From IMG/VR virus record IMGVR_UViG_3300034072_000758, positions 186,001-250,000 of that record: DNA of 64,000 bases; one strand, written 5' to 3'. The notes beneath the pieces are model-generated. The model was not told the DNA's origin and searched no databases. It saw only the letters and a program-made list of their open reading frames with translations. This document shows positions 11,225 through 60,717 of the stretch, piece after piece. How positions within the stretch are numbered: the first letter of the stretch is position 1; each line of letters opens with the position of its first letter. A program made the translations under genes and the position numbers.

Positions 11225-12079
11225 CTATATGGATCGCATGACGGCGACCATAGCCGCGTCGTCATCTTCTGTAGTCTGAACAAACAACCGAGCAAGTATC
11301 GGGTCTGTCACGTAATGGACGTTCTCTCGAATGATAGATTCGTCGTAACCGTACCCGTGCATGGTGCTGTTATTCCAACAAAACAATTCAACCTTTTGTT
11401 CTCTGCTGAGGACATCGGATAAATGACTCATCATATACAGGCTTTGCCAGCCTATTTCCCGACTACCTGCGACTATCCCCGCCTCGAAGCCTACTTTCAA
11501 AGCATCCATGCTGATATTTGTGAAGTAGCGCAGATTTTGGAAAATATGCGGGGCAAGCGCAATTTGCCCTTCTTCACCGAGTAAATCTTCATACTTCCTG
11601 ATAGTCGGCTCGATGAATTGCTTCTGATAATCCAACATACCCCGAATAGCGAAAATAACCTGATCCCTTGTTGGGTTCTTCACCATCAGAATATAAGAAG
11701 CACTACGCCGCAAATATTCATCATTGACAGCCTCGGTCGGATTTTTAATAAAGGCGTAGCTCTCGGCTTTCTTCTTGACCGCACGAAGCTGTAAATCTTC
11801 CGGCTGATCCTTCATATACCGAATAGCATCCACATCATTGGAAAACGCTGTGCGCTTAACCTGATCGGACGGATTATTGATGTGAGCCAGCATCAACCCA
11901 TTGATGCGGACCAGAGCCAGTCGAATTTTTTCCGCCATAGGCGTGTCGTTATGAAGATCGGCCCAGATTGACCAAATCATTGCGTTAAGGTGATTATCCC
12001 CATACTTATGGATGGGATAGTTGACCTTGAGAATATCCGCTGACATCTTCCTAAGTTCTTCGGTATTAAACATCAACAA
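11225..12079 (-). CDS. helical repeat protein (DUF4116-like I-x-N-P-S/T repeats) with CT-motif tail
   Basis: HINNPSDQV, DQPEDLQLRAV, FIKNPTEAV; ends DDDAAMVAVMRSI. Confidence 0.75.
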   Translation of the reverse strand: MLMFNTEELRKMSADILKVNYPIHKYGDNHLNAMIWSIWADLHNDTPMAEKIRLALVRINGLMLAHINNPSDQVKRTAFSNDVDAIRYMKDQPEDLQLRAVKKKAESYAFIKNPTEAVNDEYLRRSASYILMVKNPTRDQVIFAIRGMLDYQKQFIEPTIRKYEDLLGEEGQIALAPHIFQNLRYFTNISMDALKVGFEAGIVAGSREIGWQSLYMMSHLSDVLSREQKVELFCWNNSTMHGYGYDESIIRENVHYVTDPILARLFVQTTEDDDAAMVAVMRSI

Positions 12080-12951
12080 TTCCTCAGTACAGCAACAAGG
12101 GCTTCGTCCGATTGCGACAGGCCCGCGAATAATTTTGTCAGAGTGACATCCCGAATATAATCCGAGTTTTCGATCAGAATATTCGAGTCATAACCGAAGC
12201 CGAACATGGAGCGATCATATATCTTGAAAAGGTCTACCTTTTGCTCATATGTCAGCTTCGGGGAAACATGCTTGAGATATTCAAAGAACTCTCGCAGATG
12301 AACATAGCTTTCATTCTCGTGAGTTACATGGCGGACATATCGCGTATACGCCAGCGTTAGATCGAACGGCGGATCAACCAGCTTGTCGAAATACCGATAC
12401 CATCTGTTCATGTTCGCCACGAACATCCAAGTCGGAATCAAATGACCAAAGTGCGTAAAGAACCAATCAGTATTTTGGCTGAAACGCTCAATTGCAAGTT
12501 CGATTAATTCCGGCTGAGGATCATCGATGTCCGCCAGATTCTTATAATAGTTTTGTACATGGGCGATCTTCACATCTTCGGACGGATTTATGAAATATCG
12601 ATATAGACCGCGCTTGCGTTGTCTCAGCAACCACAGTTGCTCGTCTTCGTCCTCAACATTCATATACTTCACCAGCCACGGCGTCTTGCGCATGGCGGCA
12701 CGAACAACCGTGCGGGACGGGTTCTTGATATGAAGAAGATTGAAACCGTTGTCGTTGACCAACTTCATTCGAGCTTTAGTGGCAAGAGCTTTACTTGTTT
12801 GGAGGTCAGCCCAGATCGCCCAAATCACAGGAGCATACGGTGTTATACCCAAGGGCCAACCGCGATCCAGTTCCTCATAGGTGAGGGTTTTGATTTGTTC
12901 GAGCTTATACATTAGACCAATTATAGACAGAAAACCAATATATACAAGCAC
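12073..12951 (-). CDS. helical repeat protein (DUF4116-like), paralogue of 11225-12079
   Basis: Shares IWxIWADL; HIKNPSRTV and FINPSEDV repeats; ends SDEALVAVLRNC. Confidence 0.75.
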   Translation of the reverse strand: MLVYIGFLSIIGLMYKLEQIKTLTYEELDRGWPLGITPYAPVIWAIWADLQTSKALATKARMKLVNDNGFNLLHIKNPSRTVVRAAMRKTPWLVKYMNVEDEDEQLWLLRQRKRGLYRYFINPSEDVKIAHVQNYYKNLADIDDPQPELIELAIERFSQNTDWFFTHFGHLIPTWMFVANMNRWYRYFDKLVDPPFDLTLAYTRYVRHVTHENESYVHLREFFEYLKHVSPKLTYEQKVDLFKIYDRSMFGFGYDSNILIENSDYIRDVTLTKLFAGLSQSDEALVAVLRNC

Positions 12952-13346
12952 TAAATGATAGATAATGTCAACAGCATCATTTCTTCATCTAGGTCGGTGT
13001 CTTTGTCAGCTATTTCCAAATGCTGAATATTGATCATGTCTGGACAAATAGAAACAGCGCTCAAAGCTGTGTTTTCTTTTAGAGCGAATGAAACGTAATT
13101 TTTTGGTGTGGGTGTACCATACACCGTCAAAAACAAAATACCACGAATACGGAATTTATCATGACGTATATCAAAATACATTTCACCTTCTTTGTGAAAT
13201 ACACTAACGATATGCTGAACATTTACCTTTTCGTCAACAAATTGCCACGAATGATTAACACGATATGGCTGTTGGTGAGGATTTAATATTTCGTATTTCC
13301 CCTCACCACGCCTGATCATATCTATGATCCAAGAGGGTGAAATCAT
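12951..13346 (-). CDS. CT-motif family small protein
   Basis: Ends DTDLDEEMMLLTLSII. Confidence 0.8.
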   Translation of the reverse strand: MISPSWIIDMIRRGEGKYEILNPHQQPYRVNHSWQFVDEKVNVQHIVSVFHKEGEMYFDIRHDKFRIRGILFLTVYGTPTPKNYVSFALKENTALSAVSICPDMINIQHLEIADKDTDLDEEMMLLTLSII

Positions 13347-13747
13347 TTCGGGGAACTCAACGAAGCAACGATGGTGGGATCAGCCGGGTTCACTGGCTGG
13401 CCTTGGAAGTCCCATACACGCTCACCGTCGCGTTCTGCCATAAGCTCTTGGTCCTTGATACGATCTACGTTGACTATCTCGCTGTTGGACAGTTCGACCA
13501 GATAAGTGTAGGACGGATCGAAAGGCTTGCGCTGATAGTGATGCGTCATGAGAATGATCCGTTCATCAATAAGACGTTGGATCACTTCATGGGGATACAT
13601 TTCCTCGGAGAGAAATCCAGCGATTGCCGCGACATCTGGATCGCTCCCGAAATGTTTCAGGAACGCTTGGCCGAAGCGCAAACCGAGATACAATCCATTT
13701 TGGGTGTAATCCCGGTAAAAGTTTTGGTAATCGCTGGGGTCAATCAT
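13343..13747 (-). CDS. hypothetical protein
   Basis: Coupled ORF containing LRFGQAF. Confidence 0.7.
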   Translation of the reverse strand: MIDPSDYQNFYRDYTQNGLYLGLRFGQAFLKHFGSDPDVAAIAGFLSEEMYPHEVIQRLIDERIILMTHHYQRKPFDPSYTYLVELSNSEIVNVDRIKDQELMAERDGERVWDFQGQPVNPADPTIVASLSSPK

Positions 13748-13748
13748 A

Positions 13749-17052: not shown

Positions 17053-17412
17053 CTATTCCGAATACTTGAGGATATAGGCCAGCAAGTTGGCTTCCGCTGC
17101 CTTGCGGCCACCAAACCAAGGCAGTTTGATTTTGGGTTTGATACTATTCATTTCCTCGGAAGACATGGTGACGTGTTGGCCACCCTCTTCATGCTTTTTG
17201 CGCTGGATACGATAGTCCAGAACGAACCCATCCCCGACGATCTCGAAGCCGTAGAACCAAGTATCGAACATCTTTTGTGACCAATAGATCAGCAGAAGAC
17301 CGTCCCAACGCAGTTCTTCGCCCTTGACGCCGAAGCCGAAATCAACCTCGTCGGCAACACCTTTTATGCCGAAATTACGAAGCATCTTTTCGAGAGAAGG
17401 TAAATTTTCCAT
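17053..17412 (-). CDS. hypothetical protein
   Basis: Abuts the HD gene. Confidence 0.7.
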   Translation of the reverse strand: MENLPSLEKMLRNFGIKGVADEVDFGFGVKGEELRWDGLLLIYWSQKMFDTWFYGFEIVGDGFVLDYRIQRKKHEEGGQHVTMSSEEMNSIKPKIKLPWFGGRKAAEANLLAYILKYSE

Positions 17413-18103: not shown

Positions 18104-18481
18104 TCATTTGGTCAGCAGTATATTACTGATGAACTCTTCGACTTCTTCGACAGACAATGAAGACTTGATGTTCACAAAATGGGACCGAAAAACTGGATAA
18201 CCATTATTATCGTTCGCAAAATAATGTGTATAAAGAATACGTATCCCATCGGCTATTATTAGTGCGGAGAAATGTATTCCACTGTAATTAGGAATCATTG
18301 TTCCTATAACGGTGGATCGCCACTTAAGTCTTATGTCTCGATAGCTGTCTCTAAACTCTACACTTCTACCCGCATATCCTCGCTTGATACTTCCTGTATA
18401 GACACACGAACTTTTGTGGCGAATAACAGCAACGAGGTCATCCCACACACTTTCCGGTAAGGTGTTTTTAATTCTACGCAT
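18104..18481 (-). CDS. CT-motif family small protein
   Basis: Ends SVEEVEEFISNILLTK. Confidence 0.75.
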   Translation of the reverse strand: MRRIKNTLPESVWDDLVAVIRHKSSCVYTGSIKRGYAGRSVEFRDSYRDIRLKWRSTVIGTMIPNYSGIHFSALIIADGIRILYTHYFANDNNGYPVFRSHFVNIKSSLSVEEVEEFISNILLTK

Positions 18482-18938
18482 CTTGAAGCAACGTAGTCAT
18501 GAGAAGTTCTTCAAGTTCTTCGAGAGGAAGGCTCGTTTTAATACTGGCGCGGGGAGGTAAACTCTTAACACGAAAAGACATGAATGGTGTTACGGTTGCA
18601 TTTGGGTAAGACGGATCAGTACCTACTGACCAAATTTTCTCAATTACATATGGTTCATAAACATAAATTTTATATTCTTTAGCCAATATCAAGTGAGTAT
18701 ATCGTAAACCAGTATCCCGACCATCTTGATGCGTTTTCTTATTAGCTCTTGTGCGGACTATTATGCCGTCCAACTCCAATCGCATAATCCGCATACTGCG
18801 CCTCTGATACAGCGAATTTGACCAACTATCTTTCTCGGAATCGGTCATTTGGTTATAAATGCGACGGCTCATGAAGCAGCAAAAATTTTGCCATTTTTGT
18901 GGATCGATGGTACTTAGGGCACGACGCATCACAGACAC
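18474..18938 (-). CDS. CT-motif family small protein
   Basis: Ends LPLEELEELLMTTLLQDA. Confidence 0.8.
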   Translation of the reverse strand: MSVMRRALSTIDPQKWQNFCCFMSRRIYNQMTDSEKDSWSNSLYQRRSMRIMRLELDGIIVRTRANKKTHQDGRDTGLRYTHLILAKEYKIYVYEPYVIEKIWSVGTDPSYPNATVTPFMSFRVKSLPPRASIKTSLPLEELEELLMTTLLQDA

Positions 18939-19710: not shown

Positions 19711-20153
19711 ATGTGATTCCTTCTAAGAAGAGTTGACTTTATCATAAGTTCTTCCAGATCGTCAACGGTATATCTTGGATGAAATTTAATCCAACCGGGG
19801 TGTACTATATCATCTACTTTGAAAAAAATACCCGCGCCAAATACAAAAGGAAATGTAATATTTTCTTCGGGCGTCACATAAAGATGATCAATAAAAAGCG
19901 TCATCGCAAACTTATATGGAATGACCATAGTTAGATGATAGCGCATAGACGAATAGTCATATCGATAATGATCAGCATTATCGAAACCTGAAAATATTTC
20001 TCGAACACGCGGAGCATCAGGCGGGGAACCCGGATGTCTCCCAAAGGTATAGATTCTGGTATTCGGAGTATTGCGGGTTATTTCTGGCCGAATATTATCA
20101 GCCAGCTTATTATATAAATCCACCCAAGCCGATGTTTTATATACGTTCTTCAT
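19707..20153 (-). CDS. CT-motif family small protein
   Basis: Ends YTVDDLEELMIKSTLLRRNHI. Confidence 0.75.
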   Translation of the reverse strand: MKNVYKTSAWVDLYNKLADNIRPEITRNTPNTRIYTFGRHPGSPPDAPRVREIFSGFDNADHYRYDYSSMRYHLTMVIPYKFAMTLFIDHLYVTPEENITFPFVFGAGIFFKVDDIVHPGWIKFHPRYTVDDLEELMIKSTLLRRNHI

Positions 20154-20695
20154 GTGAATGTCAGCTTACGCATCATGAACATATCTTCGATTTGTTCATC
20201 GGTTAGCTCAATACGCGGTTCTTCATAGTTGAGAAAAAGGAAATTATTATCGGGAAGGTCTGATGCTCTACTGACTTCAAAAGTATCGAAACATTTTGGT
20301 AGATATTTGGCCGCGAACTCCCGATCTATCTTGCCATTATGTATTATGGATCGGGGTTTATCCACATTAAACGTTGTCCCGTCCGGTCTGAGGATATTCA
20401 TTACTCCTCGCACTGAAAACAATTTCCCATTGCGCCGAAAGGCTTTGAAACACACCCGTTTCAAATAGATATGCGTTTTATTAAACATAACCAAATGCTT
20501 GACCATGTATACGGACGAGACGCTGAACATCAAGCGATCATCGCCATATTCATCATCCATCCGCATACTAAGCGTATCATTCACGAAATGCGTTTCGATG
20601 TTATCTCGAAAAGGGTGTTGCTGAACAACAACCTCGTTATGGACACCATCAGCGTTGTTGATGAACCACAGCCATGTCTCTACGTCACGAAGCAT
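20150..20695 (-). CDS. CT-motif family protein
   Basis: Ends LTDEQIEDMFMMRKLTFT. Confidence 0.75.
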   Translation of the reverse strand: MLRDVETWLWFINNADGVHNEVVVQQHPFRDNIETHFVNDTLSMRMDDEYGDDRLMFSVSSVYMVKHLVMFNKTHIYLKRVCFKAFRRNGKLFSVRGVMNILRPDGTTFNVDKPRSIIHNGKIDREFAAKYLPKCFDTFEVSRASDLPDNNFLFLNYEEPRIELTDEQIEDMFMMRKLTFT

Positions 20696-22702: not shown

Positions 22703-23412
22703 GTCAATTGCCACGATCCTTTTGAGGTTTGTATCCAATTACCTCTCGCCCTAAATGATTTTACAATCTTATGTAAGTAAAATACATCATTAGCTGAGTT
22801 ATGAAGACGCTTCTTCTTAAACGGTATGTCAAATCGTTTCAACAGAGTAGCCAGCGAGGGGGTGTTTATAACCGGAAACTTCTGATTAGGTAACCGAATA
22901 GAGTATTCAAATCCGTCTTCGATGTCGATCAATTCTTTGATAGGAATATTGTTGTCGGTCAAATATTTCGATTCGATCATCTGGTTAAACACCATAACCA
23001 CTTGGTCTTTCATGATCATCTTGAGAATATGCTTCATAAACTCCAAGGAAGAGTTCTTAAAGATGATAGTGTTATGGAACTCGTTCGTTTTGGATACACC
23101 GGGCTTTTCACGCTCATCGAATATGAAACGATAGACTTTGTTTATTTTGTTTCTACGAACAACACAAACCGAAGCCTCGTGAAACTCGACGTATTCGCCA
23201 TAAATGAAATACTCAGTGTCAAATGTCACGTAGTTATTGATGGCTTCGAGCTTCTTACGGAAGCTTAATTGGCGCTGGGGTAGCTGTTCTATGCGACGTT
23301 CGCGTCGGCGTTGTAGCAGCGCTCTACGGCGATCTTGTAGCTTTCTGATCCGCGCTACCAGAACCGGGTCTTTGCTTTGAGAAAGATCATGAAGTTTTTT
23401 ACCGATATTCAT
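22699..23412 (-). CDS. DEDDh-family 3'-5' exonuclease-like protein
   Basis: VTFDTEY (ExoI) and RLHNSAND (ExoIII) motifs; basic N-terminal helix. Confidence 0.7.
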   Translation of the reverse strand: MNIGKKLHDLSQSKDPVLVARIRKLQDRRRALLQRRRERRIEQLPQRQLSFRKKLEAINNYVTFDTEYFIYGEYVEFHEASVCVVRRNKINKVYRFIFDEREKPGVSKTNEFHNTIIFKNSSLEFMKHILKMIMKDQVVMVFNQMIESKYLTDNNIPIKELIDIEDGFEYSIRLPNQKFPVINTPSLATLLKRFDIPFKKKRLHNSANDVFYLHKIVKSFRARGNWIQTSKGSWQLT

Positions 23413-23840
23413 TTGCTTGCCTGTAATATAATTAGGGCCAAAGCATCATCGGCCTGTTCTCGATTACTATATCGCTTGAGTTCAAACCCATTCCATAGCG
23501 GTTGAGCATTCAATTCCAGCGTATTCTTATCGTTCAAATTCAATGTCACGGACTTATCATTGAATTTGTCAGTGACCCGACGAAACTTCGCACTGATCTT
23601 GAAGTGTTTGGAGACGCGCAGCGTAACAATCGTACCGAAAAAGTATCCATAATGATCTTCACTATTCGGCGTCGTCTCAATGATGATACGAAGCTTCCCT
23701 GCGCAAGTCTCCAACGAACGATGATAAATTATTTTTTGTCGGTAATTGGCGCGGGATATGATCTCTTTCTCGAAGGTTGATTTCGAGATAATGTCAAACC
23801 AGAACTCAACATTTTTCAAAATATTATGGATATGCGTCAT
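23409..23840 (-). CDS. CT-motif family protein, NxxFW N-terminus
   Basis: ILKNVEFWFDII; ends SNREQADDALALIILQASK. Confidence 0.8.
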   Translation of the reverse strand: MTHIHNILKNVEFWFDIISKSTFEKEIISRANYRQKIIYHRSLETCAGKLRIIIETTPNSEDHYGYFFGTIVTLRVSKHFKISAKFRRVTDKFNDKSVTLNLNDKNTLELNAQPLWNGFELKRYSNREQADDALALIILQASK

Positions 23841-26277: not shown

Positions 26278-26600
26278 GCCATCTTCAATATAAAGTTCAT
26301 GATCGCTTCATCGGTGTTCTTGCCTCGAATTTTACATTCGAGCGGCTTTGAAAAAACACGGACATAACCATCATTCCCATATGGCAAGTCTACAGAATCA
26401 TCATCCAATAATGACGCCCATTCAAATAACATGACGACTTTTGAGCTACCAACCGTCAGAGTTACCGAGTAACACGCTCCATTCTCAGATATGGAGATTT
26501 TATAGCCATCAAAACCCATGACCCACGTGCCAGCGCGGATCGCCGTACAAGAAATAAACTGGCGTTTCAATAGCTTTCGGATGAAGTGTGCGTCGATCAT
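26274..26600 (-). CDS. CT-motif family small protein
   Basis: Ends KNTDEAIMNFILKMA. Confidence 0.85.
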   Translation of the reverse strand: MIDAHFIRKLLKRQFISCTAIRAGTWVMGFDGYKISISENGACYSVTLTVGSSKVVMLFEWASLLDDDSVDLPYGNDGYVRVFSKPLECKIRGKNTDEAIMNFILKMA

Positions 26601-46995: not shown

Positions 46996-47001
46996 AGGCG
47001 A

Positions 47002-50068: not shown

Positions 50069-50595
50069 GGCTTCACAAATAACCTAAGTGGGTTCAGTAG
50101 ACCGTATGGTCTTTCTGTATTTACTCTCCATTCGACCGGTTCGTAATATCCATGCTCATATAATTCTAAATGAAGCATGGACATCGGACGACCCTTATCC
50201 GTTGTAAGTACCTTGGCAACGTGACCTAATAACTCACCTTCTTCAATCAGTTGTCCGACTTTCTTATCGCTTTGACATAAGAGTTCGCCGTAATTTATGA
50301 CGCCACTATCACCCTGAACCATAATGAACTGCGTGGAACCCCACCAAGGACTATCGGCTTCCGGCCCGGTGAACCAACCCATGTTGACAATCATCCCCGG
50401 CTCAATAGCGTAAACTGGATCGCCTTCTTGAGCGTACAGGTCGATACCTTCGTGAGTATGGAATTTGCGGATGGTTCCGAACGCGCCTACGTGATCACCA
50501 GTCGGTATCTCGACTTCGGTGGCGATGTCGATCTCTTTGAAGCTATCGCTATCAAAGGTGAAGCCGATGAAGATTTTGTCCAGAGGTAAAATCAT
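50065..50595 (-). CDS. M23 (LytM-type) metallopeptidase
   Basis: HEGIDL (HxxxD), VYAIEPG, MLHLEL. Confidence 0.8.
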   Translation of the reverse strand: MILPLDKIFIGFTFDSDSFKEIDIATEVEIPTGDHVGAFGTIRKFHTHEGIDLYAQEGDPVYAIEPGMIVNMGWFTGPEADSPWWGSTQFIMVQGDSGVINYGELLCQSDKKVGQLIEEGELLGHVAKVLTTDKGRPMSMLHLELYEHGYYEPVEWRVNTERPYGLLNPLRLFVKP

Positions 50596-50900
50596 ATCAC
50601 TTGTAGATATATGGCCATCAGATAATTGTCCAGAGTTTCCTCAGACAATCCGGGGTAAGTCGCATATACAAAATCTAAGACACTCCCATTAGCATGGACG
50701 GACAAACCAATATGGAAAACCCCCGGCACCATAAAATCGTATCGGACGGAATTTGGGAAACTTGAAGTGGCTCCACAAATACCAATTTTCTTTGATTCTT
50801 CATTAACAACGAACGGATAATACACCAGATTGAAGCCGTTACCTTTGGACTTAAAAAGGTTTACCCATATTTCTGGTTTGAACTTGCTTTCGAAATTCAT
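50592..50900 (-). CDS. CT-motif family small protein
   Basis: FKPEIWVNLF; ends LSEETLDNYLMAIYLQVI. Confidence 0.85.
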   Translation of the reverse strand: MNFESKFKPEIWVNLFKSKGNGFNLVYYPFVVNEESKKIGICGATSSFPNSVRYDFMVPGVFHIGLSVHANGSVLDFVYATYPGLSEETLDNYLMAIYLQVI

Positions 50901-52299: not shown

Positions 52300-52689
52300 A
52301 TGATAAGTCGTGATTTTGTGTATTGGCTTCAAGGATTCTTCGAGATTTCAGAAGCCACAGGTGATGTCGATGCCGTCACCCTAACTGCCGCTCAAGCAGA
52401 CATGGTGCGTAAGCATCTGTCGCTGGTTGTGGAATATGAAACCAACCCCACCCTACCATTCGTTCAGTGGTTGATCGGTTTCATGGACGCCGCAAAAACC
52501 CCCGACAAGGCACAGGTCGAGACAATCCGAGCGAAGCTCAACGATGTTTTCAAGCATGTGATCGACCCGCCGATGGGCGATGCCAAGAAGCAAAAGAAGC
52601 TGAATGAAATTCATTCGCCGCATCCATTCCAAGGCCCACAAAAGGGTCAGATCGATACCAATCCGGGGGATTTTGTAGTACGCTGCTGA
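52300..52689 (+). CDS. hypothetical phage protein with an internal duplication
   Basis: FVYWLQGFFE / FVQWLIGFMD; CAGGAG RBS. Confidence 0.8.
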   Translation: MISRDFVYWLQGFFEISEATGDVDAVTLTAAQADMVRKHLSLVVEYETNPTLPFVQWLIGFMDAAKTPDKAQVETIRAKLNDVFKHVIDPPMGDAKKQKKLNEIHSPHPFQGPQKGQIDTNPGDFVVRC

Positions 52690-53048
52690 TGATTGTTCCT
52701 GTCGAAATGATTGTTAAGGCGCTTCTCACTTTGAAGCCGTATATACAGGTGGCGGATTTTCCGCCGCCGAATATGCGTTTTAATAATGCTGGCTTACTGG
52801 AAATCGATCCGACTTGTACTACTATGCGAACAGAGTTAGGTAAGATAGAGGTCGGGTTACGCTATAGTAGCGTCCAAAGCTTTTGGTTCATAGAAGAGAT
52901 AATCTTTTCTGACTATCGTATAAAGCAATCATCGCCATCCCATCATTTTTCTGGTACGGATTTTGTTATTGAATGTGAAACGGGTGAACCCGATCTCGAA
53001 GAAGCATTCTTAAAACTGTATCTTCTATTACCAGCATTGGAACAATAA
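52689..53048 (+). CDS. CT-motif family small protein
   Basis: Ends GEPDLEEAFLKLYLLLPALEQ. Confidence 0.8.
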   Translation: MIVPVEMIVKALLTLKPYIQVADFPPPNMRFNNAGLLEIDPTCTTMRTELGKIEVGLRYSSVQSFWFIEEIIFSDYRIKQSSPSHHFSGTDFVIECETGEPDLEEAFLKLYLLLPALEQ

Positions 53049-53607: not shown

Positions 53608-54660
53608 ATGCTCGTAGAACTCAGCCCTGAGCTTAAAGAAGCTCCCATTCGCCAGTCTAGCTTTCACGGCTTGACCAATGATCTGAAACACGCCCTTGGT
53701 GTGAATTACAACGCTTCGATCCATGTTCTCCATACACCTTCGGAAGAAGGCGTAATGTCGGTGTCCGAAGGTTTCCTCAACATCATGAGCAAATCATATT
53801 CGTCGCATTATGCGCTGCGCATTTCTCCGCACGATGTCTGGTTTATCGTTCTGACCGAGATCGCCGCCCTGATCAACAAGAACGCAGAAGCCTGTCGCTC
53901 ACTCTTCACCAAGTCGGCGGAAAATATCGTCATCGCTGTCGAAACGAATGACATCACCAAGATCGATCTGAACAAAGTCGAAGCCCAGCTTCGTGAACTG
54001 GTTCCGGTGGACATCGATCAATTTCTGCCTGAGTTTTCAACCATCACCCCAGCGGCTCGCTACGCCTGTCTCGCAGCCTTCTGTGACGGCGTGAGCCAAT
54101 ACTACAGCTACATGACCTTCTGCTGCGGCCTCAAGGCCATCCACATCGACGGTACGGTCAATGATTGGGCTTTGCTCAACGAACGGGCCGAAGACATGGC
54201 AGTCCTGTTCCAAGGCGTTGGTATCGACATCACGGAATGGATGGGTCGCGTCCAAGCCGTCGCCCTGCGCTTCATTAAGGCGCTCAACGGTGATTCTACT
54301 GATATGATCGACATCTTCTCACAAAAGAATGTCGGTTCCGGTGGTCAGAAAGAAATCAGCGGATGGTTCAAAGACATCTTCCAAAAGCCAGCTTCGCAAC
54401 TCGACCATTTCCCGAATGCTTGGGCGAAGGTCACGTACAAGAACATTGAAACCCAGATGGAGTTTACCGGCATCCACGGTTGCTTCCTGATGAAGCAAGA
54501 CGAAGCTGGGACGGTCTATGGTGATTACGGCGAGATCGTGTGCTACGCTGAACAACTCTCCGACGAAGACCTCAAAGGGTTGGAGTGGAACGAGCGTCAC
54601 CGCAAGACAGGCTTGCTTCAAGGCTACACCCCTGCCCCTGCGCCGGACGACAACGTATAA
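53608..54660 (+). CDS. DUF4419-family protein
   Basis: SYSSHYALRISPHDVWF..FSTIT..MTFCCGLKAIHIDGTVNDW. Confidence 0.75.
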   Translation: MLVELSPELKEAPIRQSSFHGLTNDLKHALGVNYNASIHVLHTPSEEGVMSVSEGFLNIMSKSYSSHYALRISPHDVWFIVLTEIAALINKNAEACRSLFTKSAENIVIAVETNDITKIDLNKVEAQLRELVPVDIDQFLPEFSTITPAARYACLAAFCDGVSQYYSYMTFCCGLKAIHIDGTVNDWALLNERAEDMAVLFQGVGIDITEWMGRVQAVALRFIKALNGDSTDMIDIFSQKNVGSGGQKEISGWFKDIFQKPASQLDHFPNAWAKVTYKNIETQMEFTGIHGCFLMKQDEAGTVYGDYGEIVCYAEQLSDEDLKGLEWNERHRKTGLLQGYTPAPAPDDNV

Positions 54661-55013
54661 TGCTCGAAGGAGTCGAAATATCCGCGCGATTTGCTACCCT
54701 TCTTGATCGTCATTTTCAAGAACGGGATCGGGCAGGGGAAGACCTTCCGTATTGGTCGATCCCCTTGAAGTTCGGATGTTTCGACTTCACCATTGAATAT
54801 TTTCGAAACGAGGGTCGTTTCTATCTCGATAGAGCAACGGACGGCGATCTGATTATCTATTTCGATTATGCTCACGGAATAAATCATCCGATCTATAAAC
54901 AGGTTCCCGACGAAAAGGAACTGATGGTCACGTGCCGTTTCTATACGGATGACAACGACGAAATACTGATCAAGATGGCTTTGGGGATGAGTGAGACTCC
55001 TATGTTCGCCTAA
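54660..55013 (+). CDS. CT-motif family small protein
   Basis: Start moved to MLEGVEI (TAATG overlap); DDNDEILIKMALGM near the end. Confidence 0.75.
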   Translation: MLEGVEISARFATLLDRHFQERDRAGEDLPYWSIPLKFGCFDFTIEYFRNEGRFYLDRATDGDLIIYFDYAHGINHPIYKQVPDEKELMVTCRFYTDDNDEILIKMALGMSETPMFA

Positions 55014-55368: not shown

Positions 55369-55621
55369 GATATTCTTTCAAATCATCGGGGAACTTTGTT
55401 ACCGGGCATTCCATGTCCTTCCCCATAACATATATACCGTCTACTTTGTAAGCATAACCCACGAAACCGTCACCTTCGACCGACGCTAAAGCTGAGTAAT
55501 CATTATATTTCCAATAATAGGAAACCTCGTTCTCGGCCACGTTCGGGCTAATGTGTGGGCGCAACTTCAATCCCCGCATCGTGCGTTCGAACAAAAAAGC
55601 ATCCATTTCAACCGGGGTCAT
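55349..55621 (-). CDS. hypothetical protein
   Basis: ATGA-coupled ORF. Confidence 0.7.
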   Translation of the reverse strand: MTPVEMDAFLFERTMRGLKLRPHISPNVAENEVSYYWKYNDYSALASVEGDGFVGYAYKVDGIYVMGKDMECPVTKFPDDLKEYLSKIPY

Positions 55622-55959
55622 CTTGCCTTACCTTCGGCTATCAAGGTGGCAATCATCAAGAACTCTTCCAATGACCCCGGTTCTTGCAAAGGACTTTCCG
55701 GGTTAGACCATCTTTGATCGAGGATAGTATATGTAGGATTCGGATTGGTGGTTTCAAAGATACGCATGCATACCTTCAAATGTAGATTACGATCACAAAA
55801 GAAATCCACGACATTATCTTCGATTCTTTGCCCCATACTTTGACAAAAGAATTTGATTAACCATTCATGTCCGGCGTATTCAAGAGTGAAATCCGCATTT
55901 ATAGATGCGAGCTTCCAATATCGTTGAAAGATGCCATTTAACAAATCTGGATTTATCAT
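55618..55959 (-). CDS. CT-motif family small protein
   Basis: Ends PGSLEEFLMIATLIAEGKAR. Confidence 0.8.
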   Translation of the reverse strand: MINPDLLNGIFQRYWKLASINADFTLEYAGHEWLIKFFCQSMGQRIEDNVVDFFCDRNLHLKVCMRIFETTNPNPTYTILDQRWSNPESPLQEPGSLEEFLMIATLIAEGKAR

Positions 55960-56426
55960 TGGAGTAATGCCAGTTTAAATATATAGTCTTCGGCTTTTTC
56001 TTGATCATATATAGCGTAAATATTATTATTGCCGCCCGCCGCCCGTATATCTTCGTTGAAGTGCGTGTGATCATAATCGTCATGTCTCAAAATAAATTTG
56101 TCCTCGGTCGATATTCTGTTTTTCAATCTGAATATGCGTATATGTAAAGCAAATATACCGGGTACATAGAAGCTAAGTCCGGTTCCGCTACCTTTTTCTG
56201 GACAAGAGATATAGGACACTCGTATCCTTAACGCTTTCAAAGGATCATCTTCGTTCTCTATTACAAAATGAAGTTCGGCTCCGCGTCCATACTTATCTCC
56301 CCCGGTACGATGGGAAAATTTGGCGCTTTTAACCAATCGCATCCAGAACATCGCATCATGGAAAATAGGAAGGGTCATATTGACAGCTTGACAACATATG
56401 GATTTATGGTAGATTGATCCTATCAC
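55956..56426 (-). CDS. CT-motif family protein, DxxFW N-terminus
   Basis: FHDAMFWMRLVKSA; ends YDQEKAEDYIFKLALLQ. Confidence 0.8.
   Translation of the reverse strand: MIGSIYHKSICCQAVNMTLPIFHDAMFWMRLVKSAKFSHRTGGDKYGRGAELHFVIENEDDPLKALRIRVSYISCPEKGSGTGLSFYVPGIFALHIRIFRLKNRISTEDKFILRHDDYDHTHFNEDIRAAGGNNNIYAIYDQEKAEDYIFKLALLQ
56388..56415 (+). promoter_or_regulatory. sigma70-like early promoter
   Basis: TTGACA-N16-TAGATT, with a second TTGACA 8 nt upstream. Confidence 0.65.
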
Positions 56427-57765: not shown

Positions 57766-58107
57766 GTGGAGGCTCTGGAAGGCGATATGAGCTATACCTA
57801 TCCAACTCTCAAGCGCATGTTCGAGCTATATACTGACAATAAGGCTGGTTTAGCTTACCAACGCCTTAGTCCAAACATTCACATCTTGCGTTTGATAACT
57901 GATGATTTCTTGCTGACCTATACCGGTCACTACTTCAATAATGTCAAGATGATGGTCACTGCCGAATGTGTTATTCAGCGGGCGGAATGTATACACATCG
58001 ATAACGAACAGATTTATCTTTTTTACGATCCGCCAACCTTCCGAGTGCTCACTACCCAAGAAGAAGCTGAACACACTCTTGTAGAATGGATTATGAAGAA
58101 CCTATGA
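57766..58107 (+). CDS. CT-motif family small protein
   Basis: PTLKRMFELY; ends TTQEEAEHTLVEWIMKNL. Confidence 0.8.
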   Translation: MEALEGDMSYTYPTLKRMFELYTDNKAGLAYQRLSPNIHILRLITDDFLLTYTGHYFNNVKMMVTAECVIQRAECIHIDNEQIYLFYDPPTFRVLTTQEEAEHTLVEWIMKNL

Positions 58108-58472
58108 CTATGAGACCCGAAGACTATCTGGCGAACAAGTGTAATCTTCCCACCATACAAAAAATGTTCGAGCTATACGCTACAGACAAGCGCATGTTTG
58201 ACTTCGAGCATCATGGGGATGATGACAGTGGGTTTTTCAAATTGGTGTTCTCTGTCAATGGAACGTGTTCTCTGATCTATACGGCTCACAGAATCCGTCT
58301 GATCCAGTATATGCAATCCGTATTCGGTAAGAAAACCGAAGGGGTTTCTATAGTAATCGGTAAAAACGTTCATTACGTTTTTCCAGCGCCGCCAAAAATA
58401 GAAATAGATTCTCTTCACACTATCGAACAGGCCGAAGAAGCACTAATGCTTTGGTTATTGACCCTCAACTAG
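58086..58472 (+). CDS. CT-motif family protein, tandem paralogue of 57766-58107
   Basis: PTIQKMFELY; ends HTIEQAEEALMLWLLTLN. Confidence 0.85.
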   Translation: MDYEEPMTMRPEDYLANKCNLPTIQKMFELYATDKRMFDFEHHGDDDSGFFKLVFSVNGTCSLIYTAHRIRLIQYMQSVFGKKTEGVSIVIGKNVHYVFPAPPKIEIDSLHTIEQAEEALMLWLLTLN

Positions 58473-58827
58473 ATTGAAGGGTTAATAACATGATTTCTTC
58501 GTCTATTTTTTCCCGGTCGGCGTCATCTAAGTAAGTGATATAAACCAAGACTTCTTTTTCCAAATCTTGTTTGAAAAAATATTCATTGTTTTTACCAACA
58601 AATAAGCAACAATGCTCAATATACTTAAGAGTATTAGTATTCTTTAGTCTGGCCATGTAGTGTTGATTATCGGACAGTCTTGGGATTTTATATAGTAGAG
58701 TATAGCCATTACCCATATATATCATTCGTACAACTTTTTCATCTATGGTGGGTTCATATATTCGACTATTTTTATTCGCCATAACCCAAGCGACAGACGG
58801 ATACCCTTTGATACGCTTCTTCATCAA
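58465..58827 (-). CDS. CT-motif family small protein
   Basis: Ends DREKIDEEIMLLTLQSS. Confidence 0.85.
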   Translation of the reverse strand: MMKKRIKGYPSVAWVMANKNSRIYEPTIDEKVVRMIYMGNGYTLLYKIPRLSDNQHYMARLKNTNTLKYIEHCCLFVGKNNEYFFKQDLEKEVLVYITYLDDADREKIDEEIMLLTLQSS

Positions 58828-59435: not shown

Positions 59436-60110
59436 TCAATGGATCGTTAGATCGCCCGACCCGGAGCTTTTCGTGTCGGTCTTGAGCGGCCCACCGTACA
59501 CATCAACGTCACCGGAACCTGACGTGGTGCCACTGAATGACATAGAAGCGTAGCAAGAAATGTCGCCAGAGCCGTGAGACTTAAGAAGAACATGTGCCGC
59601 CTTTAATTCTGAGAGTGATAAATCGCCCGAACCGGACTTTTCGACGTAGAGGGAATTGGTCACACCTTTCAGGGAAATATCCCCCGAACCATCGGCGCGA
59701 ATAGTCAGGTCTTCGTTAGCTACATAGCCGCGAATGTCCCCGGAACCACTTCTAGTGATCTTGCTGAGCGTGTTGCTTTTGATGACAACTTTGATGCCAC
59801 GGTTGGACGTGAACGAACCGTTAATCGACAGAGTGAGAACGCCCATGCTGTTGTATTTTACTTCGATCAGTTCCGCCAAATTCTCTTCAACAGAAAGGAC
59901 CAAAGAGTTTTTAACCGAATGATCGATTTCCAACTGAACGTCGATAATACCTTGAACGTTGATTTCTTTAAGCTTGACGGTGATGATATGTGTCAGGTCT
60001 TTGGAAATAACGTTTCCATTTCCAACAATCCCGAAGCCGTTTCCTACGCCGCCACCAACGAAGTTTCCATTTATGAAAACCCCCGACCCGCTGAAAAACT
60101 TGCTGAACAT
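59436..60110 (-). CDS. DUF2807 (GIN-domain) beta-helical adhesin-like protein
   Basis: Repeated GSGDI/SGSGDV motifs; SVEENLAELIEV. Confidence 0.8.
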   Translation of the reverse strand: MFSKFFSGSGVFINGNFVGGGVGNGFGIVGNGNVISKDLTHIITVKLKEINVQGIIDVQLEIDHSVKNSLVLSVEENLAELIEVKYNSMGVLTLSINGSFTSNRGIKVVIKSNTLSKITRSGSGDIRGYVANEDLTIRADGSGDISLKGVTNSLYVEKSGSGDLSLSELKAAHVLLKSHGSGDISCYASMSFSGTTSGSGDVDVYGGPLKTDTKSSGSGDLTIH

Positions 60111-60132
60111 ATCACGCTCCTGATGAATAAGT

Positions 60133-60196
60133 AACCTACAGTCTCATTGAGGTTATGTCAATTAAAATTGATTAAGAATGTTCTTTATAGTATTGT
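60133..60196. promoter_or_regulatory. divergent sigma70-like promoter pair
   Basis: Minus strand TTGACA-N17-TAGGTT; plus strand TTGATT-N17-TATTGT, with ATG 5 nt later. Confidence 0.65.
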
Positions 60197-60201
60197 TAAG
60201 C

Positions 60202-60717
60202 ATGATTACTAAAAAACGCATGAGTGAAATGTATGAATTGAACCGAACACTGGCTACGTCAATAATGTTCGGTGTTAATGATTTAGAAGATTACTTAGAA
60301 AAGACCGAATTGAGCCTCGAAGCTCAACTATCTATTGTCACTTTCGAGCTTCAATATGTAACGAATTTAAAAAACGTTCATGAAGATGTATTGCGTTATG
60401 TAAACTATGCTTTCCAACGCATGTGTAAAGATGACGTTAAAGCCGGAAATATTAAAAATATTTGGGACTGCGCCTGTTCAATGTTTTGTTACACGGGCAA
60501 CTTTATGGAGGTTCTTTATCCAGATACGCAAAAAATATTACGGGATCACCTCATGAATAATATTGAGCATTTTAAGGAAGAGGAAAAGGCATATACAAAT
60601 AGCTTCGGTACAGTGGGCCTCGATCCCAGCCGCAAATCGGTGATACAAAAAATAGCGAACAATATCTTCGACAATGATGAAGATCGTGTCAAATTCGTGT
60701 TGCTGGTTTCTTCTTAA
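60202..60717 (+). CDS. helical protein with CT-motif tail
   Basis: LSLEAQLSIV..LKNVHEDV repeat-like segment; ends DNDEDRVKFVLLVSS; start moved to MITKK. Confidence 0.7.
   Translation: MITKKRMSEMYELNRTLATSIMFGVNDLEDYLEKTELSLEAQLSIVTFELQYVTNLKNVHEDVLRYVNYAFQRMCKDDVKAGNIKNIWDCACSMFCYTGNFMEVLYPDTQKILRDHLMNNIEHFKEEEKAYTNSFGTVGLDPSRKSVIQKIANNIFDNDEDRVKFVLLVSS

What the first reader, a model, noticed from the sequence alone, without database searches (positions are those of the whole stretch)
11225..60717. The same tail is grafted onto unrelated scaffolds, arguing it is a portable module
Seen: the tail ends the helical I-x-N-P-S/T (DUF4116-like) repeat proteins 11225-12079 (DDDAAMVAVMRSI), 12073-12951 (SDEALVAVLRNC) and 42272-43378 (TDDDDIKMHLAVKYS). 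It also ends the helical protein 60202-60717 (DEDRVKFVLLVSS), a TM-anchored protein 45766-46275 (QFEEDIMKMALFI) and, more loosely, 3416-3964. Inference: a tail shared by all-alpha solenoids, beta-rich small domains and a membrane protein behaves like a domain-shuffled docking tag (repeat protein plus box architecture), not a remnant of a single paralogous fold.
Basis: partly seen in the sequence, partly recalled or inferred. Interest (0 to 1): 0.72.

Follow-up and report, generated by a model that had tools for sequence, protein, structure and literature searches.

The report
Shared C-terminal helix tag in giant phage
About one in seven proteins of an uncultivated 517-kb soil/subsurface phage, otherwise unrelated to each other or to anything known, end in the same 17-residue acidic-plus-hydrophobic helix; it looks like a common docking or addressing tag, but the six examples given represent about three kinds of scaffold, not six.

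Summary
The tail is real. A motif model trained only on small ORFs (S/T-x-E-E, then Phi-[DE]-[DE]-x-L-M-x-L-x-L-x-Phi-S, then stop) is found at the C-terminus of 118-125 of 788 ORFs of this phage. It occurs in 0.1-0.5% of internal, N-terminal, shuffled or shadow-frame controls. Third codon positions are random and the invariant Leu uses all six codons, so selection acts on the protein.

Of the six cited proteins:
- 45766, 60178 and 42272 score far above background.
- 11225 and 3416 score moderately.
- 12073 scores near background on its own, but it is a clear paralogue of 11225.

"Unrelated scaffolds" is only partly right:
- 11225, 12073 and 42272 are one DUF4116-like repeat family that shares a longer C-terminal module.
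- 60178 belongs to a second small helical family and has one similar repeat unit.
- 45766 is a member of a small domain-plus-tail family with an added N-terminal membrane helix.

Still, 145 DUF4116 relatives elsewhere lack the tail. The tail sits on predicted all-alpha and beta-rich bodies, and 119 of 125 bodies have no detectable mutual similarity.

There is no DNA sign of recent shuffling. The partner is unknown. The phage's own ClpX/ClpA/ClpP are candidates, but the one docking prediction gave no answer.

The parts
11225..12079 (-). DUF4116-like repeat protein, 284 aa; tail DDDAAMVAVMRSI coded at 11228-11266
   Evidence: PSSM 8.7; HMM window 6.7 bits, p=0.0015
12073..12951 (-). Paralogue of 11225 (28% identity, E 4e-28), 292 aa; weak tail SDEALVAVLRNC at 12076-12111
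   Evidence: PSSM 3.3; HMM 1.7 bits, p=0.03
42272..43378 (+). DUF4116-like repeat protein, 368 aa; tail DDDIKMHLAVKYS at 43301-43339, followed by 12 more residues
   Evidence: PSSM 13.2; HMM 8.7 bits, p=0.0005; AF2 model all-alpha, tail helix 345-354
60178..60717 (+). Helical protein, 179 aa, of a 3-member family; tail NDEDRVKFVLLVS at 60673-60711
   Evidence: PSSM 15.4; HMM 10.4 bits
45766..46275 (+). N-terminal membrane helix plus small domain plus tail FEEDIMKMALFI at 46237-46272; 169 aa
   Evidence: PSSM 16.3; HMM 14.8 bits; AF2: helix 2-48, strands 98-153, tail helix 155-168
3416..3964 (+). Helical ORFan, 182 aa; loose tail DDDFRVRYKLAAL at 3893-3931, followed by 10 acidic residues
   Evidence: PSSM 8.0; HMM 4.7 bits, p=0.007
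46272..46796 (+). Member of the 45766 family without a membrane helix, 174 aa; tail FEQDMITLLLTT
   Evidence: PSSM 16.1
225..530 (-). small tail-bearing ORF, 101 aa; EEEAVMILSLTA
   Evidence: PSSM 18.1
520..885 (-). small tail-bearing ORF, 121 aa; LDEALMIFTLHMP, 13 aa before the stop
   Evidence: PSSM 22.9
882..1247 (-). small tail-bearing ORF, 121 aa, missed by the greedy gene picker; DGDDAMMLILMVVE
   Evidence: PSSM 13.5
2025..2396 (+). small tail-bearing ORF, 123 aa; TDEFLMRVILTCA
   Evidence: PSSM 19.2
2387..2716 (+). small tail-bearing ORF, 109 aa; AEDAMTNLLVAST
   Evidence: PSSM 13.9
3072..3416 (+). small tail-bearing ORF, 114 aa; SEDAIMAFVLKYS
   Evidence: PSSM 22.0
4009..4416 (+). small tail-bearing ORF, 135 aa; GEDELMRLILSWP
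   Evidence: PSSM 20.6
4418..4822 (+). small tail-bearing ORF, 134 aa; GEDEYMTFLLSL
   Evidence: PSSM 17.5
4817..5134 (-). small tail-bearing ORF, 105 aa; HEEAVMMLLLALS
   Evidence: PSSM 22.3
5727..6203 (-). small tail-bearing ORF, 158 aa; YDDFMIRLRLST
   Evidence: PSSM 17.8
6200..6601 (-). small tail-bearing ORF, 133 aa; ADDFLMKLMLDLP
   Evidence: PSSM 22.8
6598..6918 (-). small tail-bearing ORF, 106 aa; FDDFLMRIVLATS
   Evidence: PSSM 23.4
6991..7338 (-). small tail-bearing ORF, 115 aa; VEKHLMLFLMMVA
   Evidence: PSSM 16.8
12951..13346 (-). small tail-bearing ORF, 131 aa; LDEEMMLLTLSII
   Evidence: PSSM 19.0
17053..17412 (-). small tail-bearing ORF, 119 aa; AEANLLAYILKYS
   Evidence: PSSM 11.1
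18104..18481 (-). small tail-bearing ORF, 125 aa; VEEFISNILLTK
   Evidence: PSSM 13.5
18474..18938 (-). small tail-bearing ORF, 154 aa; LEELLMTTLLQDA
   Evidence: PSSM 17.7
20150..20695 (-). tail-bearing ORF, 181 aa, weak; IEDMFMMRKLTFT
   Evidence: PSSM 8.1
23409..23840 (-). small tail-bearing ORF, 143 aa; ADDALALIILQAS
   Evidence: PSSM 19.1
23837..24337 (-). tail-bearing ORF, 166 aa; FGDILLMLKLKLS
   Evidence: PSSM 15.5
24334..24729 (-). tail-bearing ORF, 131 aa, weak; VSEIFMRGLLSS; paralogue of 24722-25225
   Evidence: PSSM 8.2
24722..25225 (-). tail-bearing ORF, 167 aa, weak; FLEFITKVMLTHA
   Evidence: PSSM 8.1
25496..25900 (-). small tail-bearing ORF, 134 aa; IDEYLMRLVLITS; no homologue in 5.8 billion proteins
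   Evidence: PSSM 22.4
25900..26277 (-). small tail-bearing ORF, 125 aa; ADSILMTFILTVL
   Evidence: PSSM 17.3
26274..26600 (-). small tail-bearing ORF, 108 aa; TDEAIMNFILKMA
   Evidence: PSSM 21.2
27641..28009 (-). small tail-bearing ORF, 122 aa; IEDVIAVLKILTC
   Evidence: PSSM 12.0
28002..28337 (-). small tail-bearing ORF, 111 aa; LEEILTILTLSAT
   Evidence: PSSM 20.1
28355..28747 (-). small tail-bearing ORF, 130 aa; VEDFITRYLLTRC
   Evidence: PSSM 16.6
28744..29109 (-). small tail-bearing ORF, 121 aa; FEQLLTLLVLELS
   Evidence: PSSM 15.5
31405..31941 (+). tail-bearing ORF, 178 aa; IDEKLIIMKLAV
   Evidence: PSSM 10.4
32794..33195 (+). small tail-bearing ORF, 133 aa; VDERLISLMIKYG
   Evidence: PSSM 13.4
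33189..33572 (+). small tail-bearing ORF, 127 aa; VDELATVMLLLYS
   Evidence: PSSM 15.4
33569..33904 (+). small tail-bearing ORF, 111 aa; LEEEILLLIMNYV
   Evidence: PSSM 11.8
40620..41102 (-). small tail-bearing ORF, 160 aa; IEDELMWLKMYIA
   Evidence: PSSM 18.1
41473..41856 (-). small tail-bearing ORF, 127 aa; LSDAKMILTLYVA
   Evidence: PSSM 14.1
50592..50900 (-). small tail-bearing ORF, 102 aa; LDNYLMAIYLQVI
   Evidence: PSSM 14.1
52689..53048 (+). small tail-bearing ORF, 119 aa; LEEAFLKLYLLLP
   Evidence: PSSM 17.8
54585..55013 (+). tail-bearing ORF, 142 aa, missed by the greedy gene picker; NDEILIKMALGMS
   Evidence: PSSM 14.8
55618..55959 (-). small tail-bearing ORF, 113 aa; LEEFLMIATLIAE
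   Evidence: PSSM 17.6
55956..56426 (-). small tail-bearing ORF, 156 aa; AEDYIFKLALLQ
   Evidence: PSSM 16.4
58086..58472 (+). small tail-bearing ORF, 128 aa; AEEALMLWLLTLN
   Evidence: PSSM 23.2
58465..58827 (-). small tail-bearing ORF, 120 aa; IDEEIMLLTLQSS
   Evidence: PSSM 21.2
62104..62481 (+). small tail-bearing ORF, 125 aa; SEEDLVKFLLVNC
   Evidence: PSSM 17.6

Best explanation
The tail is a self-contained C-terminal alpha-helix of about 17 residues: an N-cap S/T-x-E-E, then Phi0-[DE]1-[DE]2-x-L4-M5-x-L7-x-L9-x-Phi11-S12, then usually the stop codon. It is the only conserved element of a lineage-specific set of about 120-125 otherwise unrelated, mostly 100-165-aa ORFan proteins. That is about 15% of the ORFs of a 517-kb T4-superfamily phage.

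Most likely it is a common interaction (docking or recognition) helix. Plotted as an ideal helix:
- The interchangeable hydrophobic positions 0, 4, 7, 8 and 11 form one face, which would pack on each protein's own body.
- The residue-specifically conserved positions 1, 2, 5, 9 and 12 (D/E, D/E, Met, Leu, Ser/Ala) form an adjacent face, which would be offered to one shared partner.
- Positions 3, 6 and 10 are free.

The variable bodies would then bring different activities or targets to one hub. Membrane-anchored members would do so at the inner face of the membrane.

For the six proteins in the finding, the tail was acquired or retained by about three scaffold lineages: the DUF4116-like repeat family, the 60178 helical family, and the small-domain family that includes 45766. 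3416 is a doubtful fourth. It was then inherited vertically.

Shown:
- the motif, its strict C-terminal position, and selection at protein level
- the lack of body similarity
- its absence from repeat-family relatives elsewhere

Inferred:
- the helix faces
- the existence of a single partner
- the identity of that partner. The phage's own ClpX/ClpA-ClpP machinery is the only concrete candidate seen, and it is untested.
For: - 15% of real C-termini match the motif, against 0.1-0.5% of four kinds of control.
- All 92 HMM hits of 6 bits or more are C-terminal, and the reversed proteome reaches at most 4.5 bits.
- Information content is 1.8-3.0 bits at positions 1, 2, 4, 5, 7 and 9, and background from position -5 upstream.
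- Third codon positions carry no information and the invariant Leu uses all six codons. Pairwise third-position identity is 0.28.
- With tails removed, BLASTP finds 1 related pair among 125, and iterative HMM searches leave 119 singletons.
- Among proteins of 165 aa or more, 19 tails are seen against 1.1 expected.
- A profile of the repeat proteins finds 3,759 relatives. Among the 150 best, only the genome's own four paralogues match full length; of these, 42272 carries the tail, 11225 is the only one that scores (PSSM 8.7), 12073 scores at background, and the fourth paralogue has no tail. None of the other 145 carries it, and four sampled ones are Pfam DUF4116.
- The tail is predicted helical in both AF2 models, at pLDDT about 70-83.
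- Body composition is beta/aromatic-rich in small carriers and alpha-type in the repeat proteins.
- Carrier genes form tightly coupled tandem arrays.
- The same DNA is seen in independent metagenomes.
Against: - No partner was found. The single docking prediction (ClpX zinc-finger dimer plus tail peptide) gave 'no answer'.
- Both AF2 models are of low overall confidence (pLDDT 63 and 52). No coordinates were available to see whether the conserved face is exposed.
- The narrow size range of carriers (75 of 125 are 100-140 aa) and a 2-3-fold excess of very weak body-body hits are compatible with one very divergent fold, in which the helix is simply the best-kept element.
- The helical proteins carry a distinct subtype (triple acid, K/R at positions 4-6) with lower scores.
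- Acidic residues in a first helical turn are also structurally favoured.
Confidence: 0.45

Rival explanations
1. One hyper-divergent paralogous small fold. The helix is merely its best-conserved structural element: last strand, acidic turn, then a C-terminal helix packing on a sheet. The tails on the helical or repeat proteins are look-alikes, because an acidic N-cap plus an amphipathic helix is common. On this reading there is no portable module and no shared partner.
For: - Carrier sizes are narrow, mostly 100-165 aa.
- Hydrophobic residues at -9/-8 suggest a preceding strand.
- Weak body-body hits are 2-3-fold enriched.
- A nine-member subfamily shares W...G[DN]...FE.D upstream of the tail.
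- In the relative G001, a similar tail ends a small domain that aligns over its whole length.
- In whole-protein scans, the repeat-protein tails (3.1, 1.9 and -3.1 bits) fall inside the reversed-proteome range.
Against: - 119 of 125 bodies remain singletons in iterative HMM searches.
- Information falls to background immediately upstream of the tail.
- Residue-specific conservation (95% D/E, Met, 88% Leu) exceeds what packing needs.
- C-terminal windows of large proteins are 17-fold enriched.
- 42272, 60178 and g266979 reach p of 0.0007 or less on predicted or compositionally alpha bodies.
Confidence: 0.27
2. The tail is a C-terminal recognition tag (degron or docking peptide) for the phage's own Clp machinery, giving about 120 accessory proteins a programmed lifetime or delivering them to ClpXP/ClpAP.
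For: - The genome encodes ClpP (255 bits), a ClpX with its zinc finger, and a ClpA-like Clp_N plus double-AAA protein. It also has a separate T4-type prohead protease, so ClpP is not needed for head maturation.
- Clp recognition of extreme C-terminal tags and of the SspB C-terminal docking peptide is established knowledge.
- The tail is placed strictly at the C-terminus, within 2 residues of the stop in 108 of 125 carriers (86%).
- Tail genes lack the late-promoter motif.
Against: - Atu_ph07 has ClpX, ClpA and ClpP homologues but no tail expansion.
- The last three residues are not conserved, unlike ssrA-type tags.
- Some tails lie 10-13 residues from the end.
- The docking prediction gave no answer.
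Confidence: 0.12
3. The tail is a capsid-targeting (packaging and ejection) signal, a C-terminal counterpart of the T4 internal-protein targeting sequence. It would load a diversified arsenal into the head.
For: - The phage has T4-type head genes: gp23, gp21-type protease and gp17.
- T-even internal-protein loci combine a conserved short tag with hypervariable bodies (established knowledge).
- Phi0-x-[E/D]2 resembles the L/I-x-E cleavage context of the T4 head protease.
Against: - At least 6-7 carriers are membrane-anchored, which is incompatible with packaging.
- None of the 22 genes preceded by the T4-type late motif TATAAATA is a carrier (3.3 expected).
- Asp is as frequent as Glu at the would-be P1 position.
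- 120 different cargo proteins would be unprecedented.
Confidence: 0.05
4. Chance, or a nucleic-acid-level element. The similarity would be a by-product of a DNA/RNA signal at gene ends (promoter, terminator, coupling signal), of recent cassette recombination, or of composition.
For: 51% of carrier genes overlap the next start by 1 or 4 nt, against 25% of other genes.
Against: - Third codon positions carry 0.02-0.36 bits, and all six Leu codons are used.
- The maximum nucleotide identity between any two tail segments is 67%.
- Shuffled, shadow-frame, internal and N-terminal controls reach the threshold in 0.1-0.5% of cases, against 15% of real C-termini.
Confidence: 0.02

Closest known systems
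T4 internal-protein capsid targeting sequence (CTS)
   Same: A short conserved terminal peptide on otherwise unrelated, fast-evolving small proteins of a T4-type phage. The peptide is portable and the genes lie in variable arrays.
   Different: The CTS is N-terminal, about 10 residues long, cleaved at L/I-x-E, and expressed late. Here the tag is C-terminal and helical, some carriers are membrane-anchored, and no late-promoter motif is present.
Encapsulation peptides of bacterial microcompartments and cargo-loading peptides of encapsulins
   Same: An amphipathic helix or peptide of about 10-20 residues at a protein terminus, found on unrelated cargo and binding one shell protein.
   Different: No BMC or encapsulin shell gene is in this genome. 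The number of carriers is far larger. The acidic pair and Met signature is not described for those peptides.
Clp recognition tags (ssrA tag; SspB C-terminal ClpX-binding peptide)
   Same: Extreme C-terminal position and an acidic-plus-hydrophobic character. The phage encodes ClpX, ClpA and ClpP.
   Different: There is no conserved terminal LAA-like tripeptide. The tag is helical and longer. Presence of Clp genes in Atu_ph07 does not go with a tail expansion.
Repeat-plus-box proteins (poxvirus ankyrin-PRANC, F-box and SOCS-box adaptors)
   Same: A helical repeat scaffold with a short conserved C-terminal helical element.
   Different: Boxes are 25-50-residue, multi-helix modules that bind Skp1 or Elongin in eukaryotes. 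Nothing here matches them. Most carriers here are not repeat proteins.
DUF4116 (PF13475) repeat proteins
   Same: A profile of the three window repeat proteins and their paralogue retrieves thousands of proteins through the repeat region. Sampled ones are PF13475 at 49-95 bits.
   Different: The window proteins themselves do not reach PF13475 in hmmscan, even at E=10. Their C-terminal module and tail have no counterpart in 145 relatives.
Small-protein family of the IMG/VR relative G001 (ends ...WF.REEDA.LF.LTW)
   Same: Tandem arrays of 60-108-aa ORFans ending in strand, acidic pair, amphipathic helix and stop. 8 of 417 ORFs reach the G000 PSSM threshold.
   Different: Members align over their whole length as one domain, and Trp/Phe replace Leu/Met. 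Profile-profile comparison aligns only the tails (P=0.03) and not the bodies. Only 18 relatives were found, all unnamed.

Membership tests
DUF4116 (PF13475) repeat family | Match to the Pfam repeat model above the gathering score | tested here: not met
   hmmscan of 11225, 12073, 42272 and 60178 gave no PF13475 hit, even at E=10
DUF4116 (PF13475) repeat family | Homology of the repeat units to bona fide members (transitive) | tested here: met
   Profile A2 finds 3,759 proteins at E of 0.001 or less through profile positions about 55-136. P0027, P0031, P0033 and P0047 are PF13475 at 49-95 bits
F-box / PRANC / SOCS-box adaptors | A box domain of 25-50 residues recognisable by a profile | tested here: not met
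   No Pfam hit of that kind in any of the six. The conserved element is 17 residues and one helix
F-box / PRANC / SOCS-box adaptors | Binding to Skp1 or Elongin of a eukaryotic host | not testable with these tools
   This is a T4-type bacteriophage, so no such partner is expected
T4 capsid targeting sequence | N-terminal location with L/I-x-E cleavage by the head protease | tested here: not met
   N-termini match the motif at the control rate (0.38% reach 9 or more). The motif is C-terminal
T4 capsid targeting sequence | Late expression and presence in virions | tested here: inconclusive
   0 of 22 TATAAATA-preceded genes are carriers. No proteomic or transcript data exist
BMC encapsulation peptide / encapsulin cargo-loading peptide | A cognate shell protein encoded with the cargo | tested here: not met
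   PF00936 and PF04454 are absent from the genome
ssrA-like ClpX degron | Conserved terminal tripeptide (LAA-like) at the free C-terminus | tested here: not met
   Positions after L9 carry 0.5-0.9 bits, and the distance to the stop varies from -2 to 13
ssrA-like ClpX degron | Recognition by ClpX or ClpA | tested here: inconclusive
   Complex prediction of the ClpX zinc-finger dimer with a tail peptide gave no answer
The genome's own tail family (defined here) | C-terminal match to the small-member-only motif model above control levels | tested here: met
   Met for 45766, 60178 and 42272 (p of 0.0005 or less), moderate for 11225 and 3416 (p 0.0015-0.007), and not met on its own for 12073 (p 0.03)

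The most novel reading that the evidence does not exclude
A virus-encoded, proteome-wide address code. One 17-residue C-terminal helix would direct about 15% of the proteins of a 517-kb phage, on several unrelated folds, to a single phage-encoded machine. For example, the phage's own ClpX/ClpA-ClpP could act as a timed-turnover or delivery system. On this reading the variable bodies are a rapidly evolving arsenal of host-takeover or anti-defence effectors.
Probability: 0.15. Interest if true: 0.85.

Novelty: new variant of a known kind. Interest (0 to 1): 0.62.

Why it matters
If the tail is a docking or addressing helix, it gives a handle on about 120 ORFans at once. One peptide could be used to fish for the hub, to predict which proteins of such phages work together, and possibly as a portable tag.

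It would also be the largest lineage-specific expansion defined by a terminal peptide yet noted in a phage. For comparison, the jumbo-phage survey PMC7824862 calls a ~35-copy zinc-ribbon expansion in phage G unprecedented. And it would show how giant phages build large accessory repertoires.

If it is only the last helix of one hyper-divergent fold, it is still an extreme example of paralogue diversification. In that case the 'graft' reading is wrong.

Tried and rejected
- **Nucleic-acid-level explanation.** Rejected by codon-position information and Leu codon usage and by pairwise nucleotide identity.
- **Recent shuffling or gene conversion.** Rejected: no tail pair exceeds 67% nucleotide identity.
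- **Known families.** Pfam and PHROGs on 30 or more carriers, including all long ones, gave nothing except PHROG hits to the repeat region.
- **Homologue searches.** Small member 25496 and repeat protein 42272 found only themselves in 5.8 billion proteins.
- **Phage collection.** There was no DNA match. tblastn of a G001 family member also found nothing.
- **ESM Atlas.** No useful lead.
- **Terminase-neighbourhood loci of 25 IMG/VR relatives.** 0 tails in 431 ORFs.
- **Atu_ph07 whole genome.** No expansion: 2 of 820 ORFs match, which equals the control rate. Two of its four repeat proteins end in ...EY[IV]KM[RK][LI]GL[KR], which fits the M5/L7/L9 register. This looks like the last repeat helix and was not seen in 145 other relatives.
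- **AF2 models.** Low confidence, so no fold searches were run on them.
- **Sigma-70-type promoter scan.** At chance level. k-mer enrichment upstream of carrier genes found nothing.
- **PDB sequence searches.** The two large neighbouring ORFs (782 aa and 686 aa) gave nothing.
- **Membrane-targeting amphipathic helix.** Rejected because the tail is net acidic.
- **ClpX zinc-finger docking.** No answer.
- **hhalign of the 60178 family against the repeat family.** One repeat unit aligns, P=0.003, probability 10%, which is only suggestive.

Full report
**Context.** The window is bases 186,001-250,000 of a single 516,805-bp IMG/VR virus record with direct terminal repeats, rated complete, at 45% G+C.
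- It is a T4-superfamily phage. It has a gp17-type terminase, a gp23-type major capsid protein at 304 bits and a gp21-type prohead protease.
- The nearest cultured relatives by terminase are Agrobacterium phage Atu_ph07 and Sinorhizobium phage Phosso (52% identity), then the Pseudomonas PA5oct group.
- The same DNA, at 99% identity or more, is present in contigs of four further public runs, including subsurface and soil metagenomes. The region is therefore not an assembly artefact.

**Observation check.** All six ORFs and their quoted endings are as described. In 42272-43378 and 3416-3964 the tail is followed by 12 and 10 further residues.

I built a 13-column PSSM and, separately, a 19-column HMMER profile. 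Both were trained only on ORFs of 160 aa or less, and the six targets were excluded.
- *PSSM controls.* 15.0% of the 788 real C-termini score 9 or more. The same threshold is reached by 0.12% of internal windows, 0.48% of shadow-ORF C-termini, 0.51% of shuffled tails and 0.38% of N-termini.
- *PSSM scores of the targets.* 45766 scores 16.3, 60178 scores 15.4, 42272 scores 13.2, 11225 scores 8.7, 3416 scores 8.0 and 12073 scores 3.3.
- *HMMER on 30-aa C-terminal windows.* The scores are 14.8, 10.4, 8.7, 6.7, 4.7 and 1.7 bits in the same order. Empirical p values are <0.0002, <0.0002, 0.0005, 0.0015, 0.007 and 0.03.
- *Whole-protein scans.* All 92 hits of 6 bits or more are C-terminal, and the reversed proteome never exceeds 4.5 bits. 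In that stricter setting only 45766 and 60178 stand clear of background.
- *Large proteins.* Among the 319 proteins of 165 aa or more, 19 C-termini reach 6 bits against 1.1 expected. None of the 73 proteins of 400 aa or more carries a tail.

The refutation criterion given in the finding (scores at background) is therefore met only for 12073 taken alone.

**The family at genome scale.**
- 118-125 ORFs carry the tail. About 50 of them are in this window.
- Most carriers are 100-165 aa. In 108 of 125, the 13-residue core ends within two residues of the stop.
- The genes sit in co-directional tandem arrays, mainly between 150 and 300 kb. 51% overlap the next start by 1 or 4 nt, against 25% for other genes.
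- Aligned on the motif, information content is 2.6, 2.2, 1.8, 2.0, 1.8 and 3.0 bits at positions 1, 2, 4, 5, 7 and 9. It is 0.4-0.9 bits at positions -4 to -1 (S/T-x-E-E, a helix N-cap pattern). It is at background further upstream.

**Protein-level selection, not DNA-level.**
- Third codon positions in the tail carry 0.02-0.36 bits. The invariant Leu9 is coded by TTG, CTT, TTA, CTG, CTA and CTC.
- Mean pairwise identity is 0.46 at codon positions 1 and 2, and 0.28 at position 3.
- No two tail-coding segments are more than 67% identical.

This excludes a promoter, terminator or coupling element. It also excludes recent cassette exchange.

**Are the scaffolds unrelated?** With tails removed, BLASTP finds one related pair among 125 bodies. 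Three rounds of HMM iteration leave 119 singletons. Very weak body-body hits are 2-3-fold enriched among carriers.

With tails left on, sub-families appear:
- *(i) The repeat family.* It comprises 11225, 12073, 42272 and a tail-less paralogue at genome position 131,291. 11225 and 12073 are 28% identical over their whole length. All three window members share Y-[VL]-x-D-x-x-L-A/T-[RK]-x-F...T/S-x-D-[DE]... before the tail.
- *(ii) The 60178 family.* It has two paralogues at genome positions 265,961 and 266,440, which share N/T-D-E-[DE]-x-[IV]-K-F-x-L. One unit resembles the I-x-N-P repeat (hhalign P=0.003, probability 10%, so only suggestive).
- *(iii) A nine-member family including 45766 and 46272.* Members share W...G[DN]-x-x-x-[FL]-E-x-D. 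Five or six have an N-terminal membrane helix, and one 98-aa member is just the domain.

3416 has no relative.

The six examples therefore represent about three independent lineages plus one doubtful case. In the 45766 family the novelty is the added membrane helix, not a tail grafted onto a membrane protein.

**Structure.**
- The AF2 model of 45766 used 9 alignment rows (pLDDT 63). It gives a helix at 2-48, strands between 98 and 153, and the tail helix at 155-168.
- The AF2 model of 42272 used 4 rows (pLDDT 52). It is all-alpha, with the tail helix at 345-354 at pLDDT about 73.
- Small carrier bodies are enriched in Tyr, Phe, Trp and Ile and depleted in Ala and Gln relative to other small proteins (p=1e-6). 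42272, 11225 and 3416 have alpha-type composition.

These are low-resolution data. They agree with at least two architectural classes.

**Relatives.**
- A profile of the four repeat paralogues finds 3,759 proteins among 1.84 billion representatives, all through the repeat units. Only the genome's own four match full length.
- None of the other 145 best hits has a tail. Four sampled ones are Pfam DUF4116. 'DUF4116-like' is therefore right by transitive homology, and the C-terminal module plus tail is specific to this phage.
- Atu_ph07 (820 ORFs) shows no expansion.
- A 328-kb IMG/VR relative (G001, 45% terminase identity) has about 12 small tandem ORFans ending ...WF.REEDA.LF.LTW. Eight of its 417 ORFs pass the PSSM threshold. 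Profile-profile comparison with the 45766 family aligns only the tails (P=0.03), so homology is unproven.

**Anatomy and likely mechanism (inference).** On an ideal helix the positions fall into three groups:
- Positions 0, 4, 7, 8 and 11 hold interchangeable hydrophobic residues and span 340-80 degrees.
- Positions 1, 2, 5, 9 and 12 are conserved in residue identity (D/E, D/E, Met, Leu, Ser/Ala) and span 100-200 degrees.
- Positions 3, 6 and 10 are variable and polar.

This is the pattern expected of a helix that packs on its own body with one face and offers a constant face to a common partner. The partner is unknown.

The genome encodes ClpP, a ClpX with its zinc finger, and a ClpA-like protein, in addition to the head protease. 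Jumbo-phage Clp genes have been noted before (PMC7824862). That makes a Clp recognition tag the most concrete sub-hypothesis. However, Atu_ph07 has the same Clp genes without the tails, and the one docking prediction gave no answer.

A capsid-cargo tag is disfavoured. Some carriers are membrane-anchored. Also, none of the 22 genes preceded by the T4-type late motif TATAAATA is a carrier.

**Verdict.**
The tail is a genuine, strongly selected, strictly C-terminal module.
The tail does occur on more than one architecture and is absent from the repeat family elsewhere. But the number of independent scaffolds is about three, inheritance within them is vertical, there is no trace of recent shuffling, and no receptor is known.
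- The main rival cannot be excluded without real structures: a single hyper-divergent fold, with convergent look-alikes on the helical proteins.

Noticed in passing
genome G000:C1 28960-29496 (+), 501248-502495 (-), 362089-364362 (+); outside the window: The phage encodes a complete Clp set: ClpP (255 bits), ClpX with its C4 zinc finger, and a ClpA-like Clp_N plus double-AAA protein. It also has a T4-type prohead protease. ClpX and ClpA have 44-51% identical homologues in Atu_ph07.
   Followed up: partly
window 39597-39617 (between 37536-39596 on the minus strand and 39618-40277 on the plus strand), and 20 other sites in the genome: The T4 late-promoter motif TATAAATA occurs 34 times in the genome. 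22 of these lie within 120 nt upstream of a gene start (about 3 expected). Ten have the form TATAAATA-N5-ATG with no Shine-Dalgarno sequence, which suggests leaderless late mRNAs. One site is near the capsid module.
   Followed up: partly
window 20976-22646 (-): A class I Glu/Gln-tRNA synthetase (tRNA-synt_1c, 292 bits, plus an anticodon-binding domain) is encoded amid the tail-gene arrays. tRNA-Leu(CAA) lies at 51660-51742 (-).
   Followed up: no
window 33888-34826 (-) and 35456-36181 (-): An ART-PolyVal ADP-ribosyltransferase, preceded by TATAAATA, and an EcoRV-family restriction endonuclease homologue (172 bits). No adjacent methylase was looked for.
   Followed up: no
window 29926-30675 (-): A 249-aa ORF has a 42-residue match to the T4 portal (gp20) model at 51 bits. 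It may be a portal fragment or a domain reused in another protein.
   Followed up: no
window 53608-54660 (+) and 26597-27604 (-): A DUF4419 protein (117 bits) and a cytidylyltransferase-like protein are embedded among the ORFan arrays.
   Followed up: no
G001 (IMG/VR relative, 328,603 bp): 121414-122125, 126497-127277, 143622-143873, 204032-280; loci L033, L034, L037: A separate family of 60-108-aa tandem ORFans ends ...WF.REEDA.LF.LTW[CSTG], with conserved W, P and W upstream. Only 18 relatives were found in 5.8 billion proteins, all unnamed.
   Followed up: partly
genome G000:C1 25260-28168 (+): An AAA ATPase (477 aa) is followed by a DUF2201 metallopeptidase/VWA-like protein (468 aa). The pair is conserved in Atu_ph07 and G001 and lies just upstream of ClpP.
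   Followed up: no
window 45769: The only variant seen in other public runs over 42000-47000 is C>G in codon 2 of ORF 45766 (His to Asp), in two runs with identical statistics that may be one data set filed twice.
   Followed up: no
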